Positions 3,784-23,909 of a stretch of DNA of 33,184 nt are shown here, piece by piece. The notes under the pieces are model-generated. The model worked only from the letters and a program-made list of their open reading frames with translations, was not told the origin of the DNA and did no database searches. A program made the position numbers and the translations under genes. The stretch spans positions 310,001 to 343,184 of the forward strand of contig JANJGN010000646.1 of assembly GCA_026770705.1 (NCBI GenBank), given 5' to 3'. This stretch comes from Isurus oxyrinchus. Lineage: Eukaryota. The stretch's first letter is position 1, and the number at the start of each line of letters is the position of its first letter.

Positions 3784-3923
3784 TCAAACAGTCTGTCGAC
3801 TTCCTTTCACTGTTTGTCTCTCCCAGACACAGACTCCAGTGATAGTGATAACCACAGCCACAAGGAATATCACAGCTCGTATTCCCAGGATCAGGATCAC
3901 ATGCAGAATCTCTCCTCCACTGT
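3784..3923 (-). pseudogene. Gene B TM plus short-tail terminal exon with intramembrane Arg (SGGEILHVILILGIRAVIFLVAVVITITGVCVWERQTVKGSRQTV*)
   Basis: TGTTCTCTAG| acceptor, phase 1. The hydrophobic segment carries CGA (Arg) at 3877-3879. A 12-aa tail without Tyr ends in TGA at 3784-3786. This frame is not in the ORF track. Confidence 0.8.
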
Positions 3924-4309
3924 CTAGAGAACACACAGAAAGAAATCATCACTGACTCTCCGCTTTCAATCTCTCACTCTGGCTGAACAATCAAGCTTCA
4001 TATCACTGCAACATTTGCTGTAATATTGACCCATCCACTGGGATTCAATGTGGAATGAATGTTTTCATTGTAAACACTCTAAGAGTGGACAATCGGAACT
4101 TTCCCCTTAGCGTGGAACATTGGTGAGAATGGATCATTGTGCTGTTGGACTCCCTGTCCAATGTTTCTCTCCATCGCTGTGTACAGGATTGTGCTGTAGA
4201 AAATTCTGGAAACGTTTAGTGCAGGGTGGAAATCCATCTCGGACGCGTGTGCGAATCGGGCAGAATCGAGATGGACTCCCCCACGGACTTACACCCCCCG
4301 CTTAATAAA

Positions 4310-4690
4310 CAGTTCCAATCTTTACCCAGAGAGAGGGGAGAATGTGGAACTCACTCCCACAGGGAGTGGTTGAGGTGAACAGTATCGATGTATTTAAGGG
4401 GCAGGAGGGTCGGTAACCAGAGGGACACAGATTGACCAACTGGAGGGGGAGATGAGGAGAATTTGTTTTGACAGAGCGAGTTGTTGTGATCTGGAAGGTG
4501 CTGCCTGAAAGGGCGGTGGAAGCAGATTCAATAGGAACTTTCAAAAGGGAAATTGGATAAACACTTGAAGGAGGAAGATGGGGTAAAGTGGAGTGGTGGT
4601 TAGTGGATCTGATGGGATAGAACATTGAAAGACCTGGCACAGGCACAGTGGGCTGAATGGCCTCCTCCTGTGCTGTATCATTCTCTGCTT
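4310..4690 (+). mobile_element. Degenerate CR1-type LINE 3' fragments
   Basis: TGGAACTCACTCCCAC motif and GGCTGAATGGCCTCCTCCTGTGCTG tail. Confidence 0.7.
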
Positions 4691-22100: not shown

Positions 22101-23392
22101 TCATTGTCTAAGGAATCTCTTTGGATCCTCATTGTCTAAGGAATCTCTTTGGATCCTCATTGTCTAATGGATTATTTCTGATCCAAACCCCATATTGTTG
22201 TATTGTTGATTCCGATGCAGCATTGTAGACTGACTTGTCCCCAAGCTCAGCACTGACCCTACTCCAGCAGACACTGTGAAACACACTAACAAAGCGCCTC
22301 TCGCCTGAGCTCTGCATGTGTCGGAGGTGCCGCTGTGTTGGGTTCATGACTTTCAAAGATGGTGTTGTTTATTTGTTCAAACTGAACTGGGCCCCACATG
22401 AAACGCTGCTACCAGAAACTTCTTGTTCCCTGTCCTTCTGAAATATCCGTGATTCAGCAGGATTCTGAAGATTTGCTGACAAGGGTCTTAAATTGTCTGA
22501 TTGTTGATTGATACAACACAGGAGGAGCTCATGTGACCCATCGTGCATGTGCTGGCTCTTTCCCAATTCCTCTCCAGCAACTTTCACACAGCCCTGCAAA
22601 TTTCCCTTCAAGTATTTATCCAGTTCCCCTTCTGAAAGTTCCTGTTGAATCTGCTTCCACCGGCCTTTCAGGCAGTGAGGCAATGGTCTCTCTCTGAGCT
22701 GCAAAGTGCTCAGATTCTGTGAAATTTAAACTCTGCAGCAGATCAGAGACGCTCATGATATCTCAGAATATTTGACAGTTTTACACACAGATAGCTTTGC
22801 CTTCCTTCTCTCTTTCAGTTATCTTGCTCCCTTATTGAAGTATCTAGCAAGGTGAGAATGGACAGGAAGTGTGACACTGAACAGCCTGTCTATTCTAGGA
22901 GCTGCTGTGTTGTCTTCATGGGAAGTTTTGAATAAAGGCAGCAAAGGACACAAATTTCAGACCATTGCTATCGGAGACCTCGCAGCAGGATAGACTTCAT
23001 CCCCCAGTTTTTATCTTTGCTTCTCTACTCAACCCATCACTCCCCATCGCTCACTGACCAACGTCTGACAGCACCTGAATTTTAAGATTCTGCTCTCGCT
23101 GCTACAAACCTGCCTATCCCTGTACACTCCTCCAGACCCTACAACCCTCCAAGGCCTCTGCTCTCCTCCAATTCTGCTGTCAGACAGGGAGTCAGTGTAT
23201 ATCAGTGAGCATAGGGGTGATGGGTGAATGGGACTTGGTCTGAGTTTGTGCACAGGGTCACTGCTGAATCGATTCCCAATCACAGCTCTATAAGAATGAT
23301 CTTTTACAAAGACTATTCACCATAAATCTGTCCGAGCTGACGATGATATTACCTTGGAGAAGTGACAGGAGGAAGTAAGATTTCCCGATCAT
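13044..23392 (-). CDS. Gene A: Siglec-like (CD33-related/MAG-like) type I membrane receptor, multi-exon, with Tyr-motif cytoplasmic tail
   Basis: GT-AG-bounded, phase-compatible exons: leader 23353-23392, V-set 20746-21114, C2-set 20049-20345, [broken Ig3 17266-17532], TM 15942-16038, bridging exon (15437-15458 or 15149-15233), tail 14533-14637 and 13044-13160. Skipping Ig3 gives about 348-369 aa with no stop. Confidence 0.8.
13255..14397 (+). repeat. 24-bp minisatellite (GATTATTGATWCTGAACGGGGTTT), about 47 units, filling the last intron of gene A
   Basis: Highly homogeneous tandem array. Confidence 0.95.
14533..14637 (-). CDS. Gene A cytoplasmic exon (KRGEGKAGIKSNHRVDEYQGPVYENCERGWALRNQ)
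   Basis: TCTATTACAG|AAG...AATCAG|GTGAGT, 105 nt. Only the phase-0 frame is open. Carries a YEN motif. Confidence 0.78.
14705..14985 (-). mobile_element. CR1-type LINE fragment
   Basis: Minus strand encodes LYSLRSRRLRSDL and RGDVRKHFFTQRGVEIWNSLP. Confidence 0.8.
14986..15367 (-). other. Fourth copy of the 5' cassette (exon 15149-15233 plus flanks) lying between the TM and tail exons of gene A
   Basis: Near-identical to 8633-8930 and 23666-23955. No leader exon follows it. Confidence 0.75.
15437..15458 (-). CDS. Candidate 22-nt juxtamembrane micro-exon (KRSTSTPG)
   Basis: CTGCTCCTTCAG|AAGATCCACCTCAACACCTGGA|GTGAGC. Phase 2 to 0 exactly bridges the TM exon to the tail exon. The frame stays open beyond this donor, so the exon could be longer. 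Confidence 0.45.
15942..16038 (-). CDS. Gene A transmembrane exon, uncharged core (GRDSNEWKAGLLGAGICLSVGLSGFFIFKCVRK)
   Basis: TTTTACAG|GGCGAG...AGAAA|GTAAGT, 97 nt, phase 1 to 2. A hydrophobic stretch of about 20 aa is followed by basic residues. Not present in the ORF track. Confidence 0.82.
16230..17262 (+). mobile_element. Internally deleted non-LTR LINE with 3' end abutting the gene A Ig3 exon
   Basis: ORF2-like pieces (LDTAKAIGPGNIPA, KAQVRSVME, KSWNSLP) and tail CCCACATCCCATGAGCTAATAAAA. Confidence 0.78.
17195..17532 (-). CDS. Gene A third Ig (C2/I-set) exon; donor lost, reads through into antisense LINE to a stop at 17195
   Basis: Acceptor TTTTTAG|ATGCACC intact. Reads DAPQNLSI...IICSVESFPASNLTW...DTGDYQCVAENEHGAVEGFI. 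Homology to the gene B exon ends at about 17266, where the LINE 3' end begins, and the ITVE|GTGAGT donor seen in B is absent. Confidence 0.75.
17657..18118 (+). repeat. 33-bp minisatellite array
   Basis: Tandem TCAGTACTGAGGGAGTGCTGCACTG units. Confidence 0.9.
18120..18775 (-). mobile_element. CR1-type LINE 3' fragment
   Basis: Encodes [26 protein letters not shown] and LYSLEFRRMRADLIETYKIL, with a short tandem 3' tail at about 18120. Confidence 0.92.
19008..19835 (+). repeat. 31-33-bp minisatellite array
   Basis: Same unit family as above. Confidence 0.9.
20049..20345 (-). CDS. Gene A C2-set Ig exon (Siglec domain 2)
   Basis: TGTTAG|...CAAG|GTAAGT, 297 nt, phase 1-1. Reads DFTDKPTIFPAEIIAGKRVDVSCTFNTTCNGTAAPVLTW...HGHTLSCRVRYP...LTVQ. 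The extra Cys suits the Siglec interdomain disulfide, and the pattern matches CD33 domain 2. Confidence 0.92.
20746..21114 (-). CDS. Gene A Siglec V-set (sialic-acid-binding) Ig exon
   Basis: CCCCAG|...TTCTG|GTAAG, 369 nt, phase 1-1. Siglec hallmarks: CVQIPC (two Cys), C-strand Trp, DCSL in the E strand, and F strand DAGPYFFRIE with the essential Arg (codon 20807-20809) and no canonical F-strand Cys. Confidence 0.93.
21362..21658 (-). mobile_element. tRNA-derived SINE flanked by an approximately 30-bp direct repeat
   Basis: Degenerate A/B-box head (GGGTGTAAATCCC) and tail CACATCCCATGAA shared with the LINE at about 17235. Flanks TTAGTGAA(A/G)CCAGTCTTCCAC(T/C)CAACACAG lie at about 21332 and 21659, and are single-copy in gene B (about 7819). 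Confidence 0.7.
21878..22166 (+). repeat. 28-bp tandem repeat (CATTGTCTAAGGAATCTCTTTGGATCCT), about 10 units
   Basis: Direct tandem units. Confidence 0.92.
23353..23392 (-). CDS. Gene A signal-peptide exon (MIGKSYFLLSLLQ; exon including UTR 23353-23434)
   Basis: ATG at 23392 and 40 coding nt ending CAAG|GTAAT (phase 1). Acceptor is CTTTCTCTTTCAG. It joins the V exon to give MIGKSYFLLSLLQVGLSQEW. Confidence 0.85.
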
Positions 23393-23824
23393 TGTCCACT
23401 CCCAGATATTCCATCCACTTCTCACTCTCAAACTCTGAAAGAGAAAGGAGTTAATGAGACCTCACCTCTTGACCAACAGATCTCGAGAGAGCAGAACTCC
23501 TTTTGGACAATGACTTCAAAGACTAATTTGTTTCTCTGTGGGATGATAGGTGTTCTGCAGAGAGTTACAAGGCTTTAAGAATGAAAAACAATGAAGGGCT
23601 TGCATTTCTATAGCACCTTTCACCAGCTCAGGGCATCCCACTTCCCTCATCCCTTGAGCTAGAAAGATGTTCTGTACAATAGACTTGAGCTCACACCCAG
23701 ATCTCAATAATCAGTAGAAATCTTTCAAAGGCATCAATCATTGGAATCTGTCTTTATAAAGTCACAACATCAACAAAGGACGGTGTTGGTCGTGGAAGTG
23801 AATTCCAATCATTCCGTTACTTAC

Positions 23825-23909
23825 CCAGTACCTGTCCGACTGCTCGCCTGGGGAGGAACTGCCCACACGCTCTGCTTGGGCTGAATGACCTCTTCCTGTG
23901 CTCCTCCCT
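23825..23909 (-). other. 85-nt upstream (5'UTR) exon cassette of gene A
   Basis: ACACAG|AGGGAG...CTGG|GTAAGT, no ATG, about 390 nt upstream of the leader exon. Also present at 1000-1084, 8792-8876 and 15149-15233. Confidence 0.6.

What the first reader, a model, noticed from the sequence alone, without database searches (positions are those of the whole stretch)
3784..23909. Paired-receptor Siglec cluster in a probable cartilaginous fish: Tyr-tail receptor (A) next to an Arg-TM activating-type twin (B)
Seen: two tandem Siglec genes share leader, V framework and C2 (about 4/99 aa different) but end in unrelated membrane modules. A has an uncharged TM plus a Tyr-motif tail, and B has a TM with Arg (LGIRAVIF) plus a 12-aa tail without Tyr. 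A third paralog starts at the left edge. Known: primate Siglec-5/14 and Siglec-11/16 use this layout, with the charged TM residue recruiting the adaptor DAP12 and ectodomains homogenised by gene conversion. Inference: an independently evolved or very ancient paired-Siglec system at the base of jawed vertebrates. Both TM exons are invisible in the ORF track.
Basis: partly seen in the sequence, partly recalled or inferred. Interest (0 to 1): 0.85.

Follow-up and report, generated by a model that had tools for sequence, protein, structure and literature searches.

The report
Shark Siglec pair; activating copy broken
Two neighbouring Siglec-type immune receptor genes of a shark share their outer parts but carry different membrane anchors; the arginine-bearing "activating" anchor exon is real, spliced and conserved in other sharks, but the copy in this window has a premature stop codon.

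Summary
On the minus strand lie gene A (13044-23909), gene B (3784-8876) and the 5' end of a third paralog (510-1084). The V domains are Siglec-like: best solved relatives are Siglec-5, CD33, Siglec-8 and MAG, with the sialic-acid arginine and the Siglec cysteine pattern.

A and B differ at 4 of 98 residues in the first C2 domain. Their homology stops inside the second C2 exon.

A continues into an uncharged TM and a three-exon tail with conserved tyrosines. B ends in ILHVILILGIRAVIFLVAVVITITGVCVW plus 12 residues.

RNA-derived contigs from four runs of two organisms join the C2-1 donor (6071) to the Arg-TM acceptor (3923). Intact proteins with the same module are annotated in four shark species.

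This B copy is damaged:
- an in-frame TGA at V codon 7
- a 1-nt deletion in the leader
- loss of the core Trp
- a half-deleted second C2 exon
- no B-specific letters in mRNA contigs

The V exons are not homogenised (72% aa identity, dS 0.32, against about 5% divergence in the flanking introns). A's tail is not a canonical ITIM/ITSM tail.

The scan noted the same Arg-TM exon on other pieces of this genome.

The parts
23825..23909 (-). Gene A, 85-nt 5'UTR 'cassette' exon
   Evidence: Same 85-nt exon with AG acceptor and GTAAGT donor as B's RNA-supported exon 8792-8876.
23353..23434 (-). Gene A leader exon (ATG at 23392; MIGKSYFLLSLLQ, phase 1 donor)
   Evidence: Identical over 13 aa to the start of Carcharodon P0018.
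20746..21114 (-). Gene A V-set exon, intact, with YFFRIE arginine and 3 Cys
   Evidence: V-set 2.5e-11, Ig_CD22 1e-08; Siglec-5 5e-15, CD33 2e-14, MAG 1e-13.
20049..20345 (-). Gene A first C2-set exon, intact, phase 1-1
   Evidence: Differs from B at 4 of 98 aa.
17262..17532 (-). Gene A second C2 exon. Its last codons and donor are replaced by about 1.1 kb of unrelated repeat-like DNA, and no phase-1 donor lies before the stop at 17195-17197
   Evidence: The missing end is found only in B (5589-5608).
15942..16038 (-). Gene A TM exon (uncharged; AGLLGAGICLSVGLSGFFIF KCVRK), phase 1 in and phase 2 out
   Evidence: Identity is 97-100% to Carcharodon P0187/P0188.
15149..15233 (-). Gene A cytoplasmic exon. 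It is a copy of the 85-nt 5'UTR cassette exon, read as GSSTGRGHSAQAERVGSSSPGEQSDRYW
   Evidence: The same peptide follows the TM in P0187, P0185, P0018 and P0007.
14533..14637 (-). Gene A cytoplasmic exon X (KRGEGKAGIKSNHRVDEYQGPVYENCERGWALRNQ), phase 0-0
   Evidence: (94% to P0187).
13044..13160 (-). Gene A last exon (KKDEKVLEMKSNRGVNPDTDDDLYANCDFAEDSVYGNL, then stop)
8792..8876 (-). Gene B 5'UTR cassette exon
   Evidence: Joint 8381/8792 in contigs. Sequence.
8303..8381 (-). Gene B leader exon. It is 1 nt shorter than in A and C (TCTTAC to TCTAC), which puts the usual ATG out of frame
   Evidence: Contigs of the second organism all carry the extra base at 8326 (table 4).
7227..7601 (-). Gene B V-set exon. 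It has an in-frame TGA at 7582-7584 where A has TGG, GICL in place of the core GVWF, and the arginine YFFRIE kept
   Evidence: Joints 6367/7227 and 7601/8303.
6071..6367 (-). Gene B first C2-set exon, open
   Evidence: Joints at both ends.
5595..5747 (-). Gene B relic of the second C2 exon. The 5' half and acceptor are missing and the donor is intact. It is skipped in the C2-1 to TM joint
3784..3923 (-). Gene B terminal exon: TM with arginine (ILHVILILGIRAVIFLVAVVITITGVCVW), 12-aa tail, TGA at 3784-3786
   Evidence: Joint 3923/6071 in four runs. Identity is 89-93% to Carcharodon P0179/P0180/P0182.
1000..1084 (-). Third paralog, 5'UTR cassette exon
510..591 (-). Third paralog, leader exon (MIGKSYFLLSLLE). 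Its V exon lies beyond the left edge

Best explanation
The window holds part of a tandem array of Siglec-family genes, closest to CD33 and MAG, from a lamniform-like shark. All Ig exons are phase 1-1, so they can be combined freely with alternative 3' modules.

Gene A is an apparently intact two-Ig receptor. Its chain is leader, V, C2-1, uncharged TM and a three-exon tyrosine tail. Its damaged second C2 exon has no usable donor and would be skipped.

Gene B is a copy of a conserved shark gene type: leader, V, C2-1, then one terminal exon. That exon encodes a TM with a buried arginine and a 12-residue tail. This is the usual build of a receptor that signals through a separate ITAM adaptor chain.

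The module is genuine and in use in sharks. This particular B copy is most likely a recently inactivated pseudogene or a null allele.

Shown: exon structure, splice joints, conservation of both modules and the lesions in B. Inferred: adaptor coupling, signalling direction, sialic-acid binding, skipping of A's second C2 exon and pseudogene status.
For: Family:
- V exon: Pfam V-set and Ig_CD22.
- Best solved relatives: Siglec-5, CD33, Siglec-8 and MAG at 1e-13 to 5e-15. YFFRIE aligns on YFFRVE/YFFRME and CVQIPC on CVLVPC.
- The Carcharodon Arg-TM homolog's V+C2 is best matched by CD33 at 1e-26.

Module reality:
- GT-AG joints 3923/6071, 6367/7227, 7601/8303 and 8381/8792 appear in contigs of four runs from two organisms.
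- The Arg module follows C2-1 in intact public models of Carcharodon carcharias, Scyliorhinus canicula, S. torazame and Chiloscyllium punctatum. ILGIRA is invariant.

A's exon chain:
- The same TM, cassette, exon X and last-exon chain occurs in Carcharodon P0187, Cetorhinus P0185 and Rhincodon P0191. Phases match in the window.

B decay:
- TGA at codon 7 of the V exon (TGG in A; the aligned W is present in the shark homologs read).
- 1-nt leader deletion.
- GVWF changed to GICL.
- Half-deleted second C2 exon.
- Longest terminal branch within the shark clade of the V tree (0.36).
- In run X6, from the window's own organism, all contig depth at 6135, 6296, 6316, 7546 and 7569 carries non-B letters.
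Against: - The contigs are assemblies, not reads, and drop rare variants. Absence of B-specific letters therefore does not prove silence.
- An exact 310-nt contig (3915-4224, no differences) shows that the B locus or an identical copy is represented in X6.
- The stop codon was not checked in DNA reads of this or other individuals.
- An AG 21 nt downstream of the V acceptor (AAAAG|GC) would skip the stop in frame.
It rests on homology to automatic gene models.
Confidence: 0.7

Rival explanations
1. B is a working activating receptor and A/B are a true functional pair, like Siglec-5/14. On this reading the stop is an assembly error, a null allele of one individual, or is bypassed by the downstream in-frame acceptor.
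For: - The rest of B's V, C2-1 and TM exons are open.
- The sialic-acid arginine is kept.
- The C2-1 to TM joint is seen in the same organism's run.
- An exact-match contig covers the B TM acceptor region.
- Null alleles of activating Siglecs are known in humans (established knowledge: SIGLEC14 null, SIGLEC16P).
Against: - Four independent lesions are present: TGA, leader frameshift, lost core Trp and C2-2 relic.
- No B-specific letters appear at five exonic sites in X6.
- The V domains of A and B share only 72% aa identity.
- B's V sits on a long branch.
Confidence: 0.17
2. A, B and the third copy are not separate genes. They are units of one long transcription unit whose exons are joined across units, giving multi-V proteins or read-through chimeras. 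The 'membrane modules' would then be alternative 3' ends.
For: - A 'goes back' joint 8876/5594 in two runs joins a second-C2 donor to the acceptor of the 85-nt cassette exon.
- Public models carry 2-4 V domains in a row (P0001-P0006).
- Some public models run TM, cassette, then the next leader out of frame (P0188-P0190).
Against: - Each unit has its own leader exon with an ATG and a signal-like sequence, and its own 5'UTR exon that is spliced to it.
- With the acceptor actually used (CAG|AG, table 5c), the read-through frame does not reach the V exon in phase.
- The joint could equally be A-type splicing of a paralog laid on the nearest copy of the cassette.
Confidence: 0.08
3. The Arg-TM exon encodes only a membrane anchor, and the arginine has no adaptor role. 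On this reading B-type genes are decoy or adhesion receptors.
For: No adaptor could be tested here. A 2014 survey reported no FcR gamma chain in cartilaginous fish (PMC4016189).
Against: An unpaired arginine in the middle of a TM is costly. Here it is invariant (ILGIRA) across three shark orders while neighbouring residues vary. The short tail without tyrosine is also conserved.
Confidence: 0.05

Closest known systems
Primate paired Siglecs: Siglec-5/Siglec-14 and Siglec-11/Siglec-16 (with the SIGLEC16P pseudogene and the SIGLEC14 null allele)
   Same: - Neighbouring Siglec genes with related ectodomains.
- One has its own tyrosine tail. The other has a basic TM residue and a short tail.
- The activating member is prone to inactivation.
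   Different: - In primates the V and first C2 domains are kept nearly identical by gene conversion. Here the V exon is the most divergent part (72% aa, dS 0.32), while the introns and C2-1 are 94-97% identical.
- A's tail lacks the ITIM plus ITIM-like pair.
- The adaptor is unknown in sharks.
CD33 (Siglec-3) and CD33-related Siglecs
   Same: - Two-domain V plus C2 build.
- The best solved match for V+C2 is CD33.
- Shark paralogs of this family carry LLYASINF ... TEYAQIRF tails. From my own recollection of the CD33-related consensus (a lead, not a test), these resemble LxYAxLxF ... TEYSEI.
   Different: - The V tree puts all elasmobranch sequences in their own clade, apart from the tetrapod CD33-related clade.
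- MAG scores almost as well as CD33.
- Orthology and synteny were not shown.
Siglec-15
   Same: A conserved Siglec with V plus C2, a basic TM residue and a short tail. It is known from fish to mammals (PMC7226832).
   Different: It is much less similar in sequence: 1.5e-06 against 5e-15 for Siglec-5. It has Lys, not Arg, and is a single conserved gene, not a cluster member.
Other paired Ig receptor families built by exon shuffling (KIR, LILR/PIR, CHIR)
   Same: - Tandem clusters and birth-and-death evolution.
- The same Ig exons are combined with an ITIM tail or with an Arg/Lys TM module.
- Pseudogenes are frequent.
   Different: The Ig domain family is different, and the lectin-type V domain with the sialic-acid arginine is absent from those families.

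Membership tests
Siglec family (I-type lectins) | N-terminal V-set domain with the conserved F-strand arginine that binds sialic acid | tested here: met
   YFFRIE in A and B aligns on YFFRVE of Siglec-5 and YFFRME of CD33. Pfam V-set and Ig_CD22 match.
Siglec family (I-type lectins) | Siglec cysteine pattern: three Cys in the V domain (CxxxPC ... DCSL) and three in the first C2 domain | tested here: met
   Read directly from the sequence. V has SCVQIPC and GDCSL. C2-1 has VSC, TTC and LSC.
Siglec family (I-type lectins) | Closest sequence relatives are Siglecs rather than other Ig families | tested here: met
   The top 17 solved hits are all Siglecs. The next are pIgR and JAML, at 1e-07 and weaker.
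Siglec family (I-type lectins) | Binds sialylated glycans | not testable with these tools
   Needs a glycan array with an Arg-to-Ala control.
CD33-related Siglec subfamily | Groups with CD33-related Siglecs rather than MAG, CD22, Siglec-1 or Siglec-15 in a phylogeny | tested here: inconclusive
   - The elasmobranch clade (99/99) and the tetrapod CD33-related clade (100/99) are separate.
- Shark MAG-like, SMP-like and CD22-like rows fall outside the elasmobranch clade, but the joining node is open.
- Bona fide human MAG, CD22, Siglec-1 and Siglec-15 sequences were not on hand.
CD33-related Siglec subfamily | Cytoplasmic membrane-proximal ITIM plus distal ITIM-like motif | tested here: not met
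   - Neither A nor B has this pair.
- A has VDEYQGPVYENC and DDLYANC-x7-VYGNL.
- The pair is present in other shark paralogs (P0001, P0003, P0015, P0017).
Paired inhibitory/activating receptors | Closely linked genes with near-identical ligand-binding ectodomains | tested here: not met
   The genes are linked and C2-1 is 96% identical. The V domains share only 89 of 124 positions, with dS 0.32 against 0.07 in C2-1.
Paired inhibitory/activating receptors | One member with a basic TM residue and a short tail without signalling motifs | tested here: met
   B's terminal exon carries the Arg at position 11 of a 29-residue hydrophobic stretch, followed by a 12-aa tail without Tyr. This is conserved in four species.
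Paired inhibitory/activating receptors | The other member carries a functional ITIM | tested here: inconclusive
   SVYGNL in A fits S-x-Y-x-x-L. The -2 residue is Ala or Pro in Rhincodon, Chiloscyllium and Carcharodon P0018. What is conserved is YxN and the Yxx(C/W)-x7-Yxx(L/V/I) spacing.
Paired inhibitory/activating receptors | Both members encode intact proteins | tested here: not met
   B has an in-frame TGA at 7582-7584 and a leader frameshift.
Paired inhibitory/activating receptors | The activating member associates with an ITAM adaptor through the TM charge | not testable with these tools
   No shark adaptor sequence was on hand, and complex prediction references cover microbes only.

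The most novel reading that the evidence does not exclude
Elasmobranchs have their own full paired Siglec system. In it, one pool of V and C2 exons is combined with three conserved membrane modules:
- ITIM/ITIM-like tail
- YxN / ITAM-like tail
- Arg-TM

The system is at least as old as the split of lamniform, carcharhiniform and orectolobiform sharks. It either arose independently of the primate pairs or descends from a CD33/MAG-type ancestor that teleosts lost. It would also imply a DAP12-like or other acidic-TM adaptor in cartilaginous fish, where FcR gamma was reported missing.
Probability: 0.45. Interest if true: 0.65.

Novelty: new member of a known kind. Interest (0 to 1): 0.5.

Why it matters
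The fish Siglec literature I could read says that fish regularly have only Siglec-1, CD22, MAG and Siglec-15, and lack CD33-related Siglecs (PMC7226832). That statement rests on bony fishes.

Sharks have an expanded cluster of Siglecs closest to CD33 and MAG, with inhibitory-type, tyrosine-tail and arginine-TM forms. This shows that modular inhibitory/activating Siglec sets are not a mammalian peculiarity.

The cluster offers a second, independent case in which to study how pathogen pressure shapes such pairs. It also raises a concrete question: which adaptor chain serves them in cartilaginous fish?

The genes are already present as automatic models in public shark annotations. The gain is therefore interpretation rather than discovery of new sequence, and the B copy in this window is itself probably dead.

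Tried and rejected
- Tail search: I looked for A's tail by motif scan alone and missed it. Homology to shark models then found the three exons.
- TE split of A's second C2 exon: I looked for the lost 3' end of that exon downstream, as a TE-split exon. It is absent from A, and the only copy is in B.
- Homogenised ectodomains by gene conversion: rejected for the V exon.
- Multi-unit read-through in frame: with the acceptor actually used for A/C-type leader exons, the frame does not fit.
- Other exons: a tblastn of all 190 fetched proteins found no further exons in 24000-33184 or on the plus strand.
- Literature: searches for Siglecs in sharks or cartilaginous fish found no dedicated paper.
  - The joined protein was never built or searched.
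  - Runs of N were left untouched.
  - Complex prediction was not used, because no shark adaptor sequence was on hand.

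
Full report
**What is in the window**

All coding matches lie on the minus strand.

A self-comparison shows three copies of one gene 5' region: 1-1140, 8240-9154 and 23290-24184. It also shows colinear A/B matches over the leader-V region (6974-7858 with 20483-21371, 88%), the first C2 region (6043-6499 with 20021-20477, 96%) and part of a second C2 exon (5606-5747 with 17262-17403, 94%). 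Beyond 5606 / 17262 the two genes share nothing.

I read the exons in three frames and fixed their borders from splice signals, from phases, and for gene B from RNA-derived joints.

**Gene models**

Gene A has these exons:
- 5'UTR exon 23825-23909
- leader 23353-23434 (MIGKSYFLLSLLQ)
- V 20746-21114
- C2-1 20049-20345
- a second C2 exon 17262-17532
- TM 15942-16038
- three tail exons: 15149-15233, 14533-14637 and 13044-13160

Gene B has these exons:
- 5'UTR exon 8792-8876
- leader 8303-8381
- V 7227-7601
- C2-1 6071-6367
- a relic of the second C2 exon 5595-5747
- a terminal exon 3784-3923

Only the 5'UTR exon (1000-1084) and leader (510-591) of a third copy are in the window. All Ig exons are phase 1-1, and both TM exons accept phase 1.

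**Family**

- The V exons match Pfam V-set and Ig_CD22, and the C2 exons match C2-set_2 and Ig_3.
- Against solved structures, A's V exon hits only Siglecs at the top: Siglec-5 5e-15, CD33 2e-14, Siglec-8 8e-14, MAG 1e-13, Siglec-10, Siglec-7 and sialoadhesin. Siglec-15 (1.5e-06) and CD22 (1e-03) are far behind.
- The alignment puts YFFRIE on the arginine-bearing YFFRVE/YFFRME, and CVQIPC on CVLVPC.
- The V and the first C2 domain each carry three cysteines, which is the Siglec pattern.
- The whole V+C2 of the Carcharodon homolog P0182 is best matched by CD33 (1e-26), then MAG (2e-24).
- A separate shark MAG-like protein matches MAG over five domains at 5e-51.

**The Arg-TM exon is real**

I laid contigs of four public runs on 3500-9200. 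One run is from the window's organism and three are from a related one. All four show a joint from 6071 to 3923 with GT..AG ends on the minus strand. This is C2-1 spliced directly to the Arg-TM exon, skipping the relic.

The contigs also show the joints 6367/7227, 7601/8303 and 8381/8792.

A search of 1.84 billion representative proteins with A's V exon, plus a follow-up on the module, found intact models ending in the same module after C2-1:
- Carcharodon carcharias: P0179, P0180, P0182
- Scyliorhinus canicula: P0181, P0183
- S. torazame: P0125, P0006
- Chiloscyllium punctatum: P0025

ILGIRA is invariant while flanking TM residues vary. NCBI's pipeline names these models Siglec-12, -13, -14 or CD33-like.

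**This B copy is damaged**

- Codon 7 of B's V exon is TGA, where A has TGG. The shark homologs read have W at the aligned position.
- The leader lacks one base, so the usual ATG is out of frame.
- The core GVWF of the C strand reads GICL.
- The second C2 exon has lost its 5' half and its acceptor.
- B's V has the longest terminal branch within the shark clade of the V tree.
- In run X6, from the same organism, all contig depth at five exonic sites that distinguish B (6135, 6296, 6316, 7546, 7569) carries the other letter. The 3'UTR contig differs at 17 of 186 positions.

The spliced Arg-TM messages seen therefore probably come from paralogs. Contigs drop rare variants, so this is not proof of silence. 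One exact contig (3915-4224) does cover B's TM acceptor unspliced.

An AG 21 nt inside the V exon would skip the stop in frame, but I saw no joint for it.

**Gene A**

A's second C2 exon has lost its last codons and its donor to about 1.1 kb of unrelated, repeat-like DNA. No phase-1 donor precedes the stop. Skipping this exon joins C2-1 to the TM in frame, as in Carcharodon P0018.

The tail chain runs TM, then a coding copy of the 85-nt 5'UTR cassette exon, then exon X, then the last exon. The same chain occurs in Carcharodon P0187, Cetorhinus P0185 and Rhincodon P0191.

The conserved tail features are EYxGPxYENC and (L/I)YANC-x7-VYGN(L/V/I). These are YxN motifs with ITAM-like spacing. The last one fits the ITIM pattern in this species only by its serine.

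**Is it a pair?**

Identity between A and B, by region:

| Region | nt identity | Other measures |
|---|---|---|
| Introns around the V exon | 94-95% | |
| C2-1 exon | 97% | dS 0.07 |
| V exon | 82% | dS 0.32, dN 0.17, 89 of 124 aa shared |

The ligand-binding exon is thus an old, divergent island in a young or homogenised background. This is the reverse of the Siglec-5/14 pattern.

A's V is closer to its Cetorhinus counterpart (90%), and to the V of the Carcharodon Arg-TM genes (86% to P0179), than to B's V.

In the V tree, Arg-TM, YxN, ITIM and ITAM-tailed proteins are intermixed within a single elasmobranch clade (99/99). For example, the S. canicula ITIM protein P0001 and the S. torazame Arg-TM protein P0006 share both of their V lineages (100/99 and 100/100).

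Pairing of one ectodomain type with opposite modules is therefore supported for the family, though not specifically for A and B here.

**Comparison with what is known, and novelty**

The architecture is that of known paired immune receptors, and of Siglec-14, -15 and -16 in particular.

- A fish Siglec paper states that fish have Siglec-1, CD22, MAG and Siglec-15 and lack CD33-related Siglecs (PMC7226832). I found no paper on shark Siglec pairs.
- A 2014 survey found no FcR gamma chain in cartilaginous fish (PMC4016189), so the adaptor is an open point.
- Whether the shark clade is orthologous to tetrapod CD33-related Siglecs is unresolved.
- The scan had already noted Arg-TM Siglec-like exons on other pieces of this genome, one described as an intact two-Ig gene. 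I could not check those.

**Limits**

- Reads were available only as contigs and for one stretch.
- The joined spliced proteins were not built or searched, by rule.
- Species identity is inferred from best protein matches only.

Noticed in passing
window 1000-1084, 8792-8876, 15149-15233, 23825-23909 (minus strand): One 85-nt exon with its flanks (about 300 nt, 94-97% identical) occurs four times. Three copies serve as the 5'UTR exon of A, B and the third paralog. The fourth sits in A's tail and is read as a 28-aa cytoplasmic segment. That segment is conserved in Carcharodon, Cetorhinus, Rhincodon and Chiloscyllium proteins. The same exon is thus used as UTR and as coding sequence.
   Followed up: partly
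window 5594/8876 (joint in runs X17 and X19): Contigs join the donor of a second-C2 exon to the acceptor of the 85-nt cassette exon ('goes back 3283'). This is either a TM-less isoform of an A-type paralog or read-through into the next gene's 5'UTR exon. Public models P0188-P0190 show similar read-through, out of frame.
   Followed up: partly
window 16040-17262 (minus strand): About 1.1 kb of repeat-like DNA, including a 197-aa ORF at 16393-16986, replaces the end of A's second C2 exon. It looks like an interspersed element but was not classified.
   Followed up: no
window 13254-14403; 9005-10419 and 11273-11708; 1357-2349, 17653-18119, 19004-19856, 24279-24409, 26509-26802: Three kinds of long tandem arrays fill the introns and the A-B spacer. 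One is a 24-nt unit array of about 1.1 kb. One is a roughly 43-nt unit array. The third is a 33-nt unit family scattered at five or more places. They create long spurious ORFs in both strands.
   Followed up: no
window 18219-18784, 14594-14884 and 3189-3643: Fragments with the C-terminal motif of a LINE reverse-transcriptase ORF (…FFTQRVV..WNSLP…) lie in the introns of A and downstream of B.
   Followed up: no
Public proteins P0011 (Pristis pectinata) and P0001-P0006: A sawfish member of the family carries a canonical ITAM in its own tail (YQEL-x7-YSEL). Several shark and ray models have two to four V domains in tandem.
   Followed up: no
window 26979-27164, 29798-30103, 31039-31362, 31840-32265; 32266-33184: Five runs of N and a G-rich low-complexity tract fill the right end of the window. 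No protein matches occur beyond 24000.
   Followed up: no
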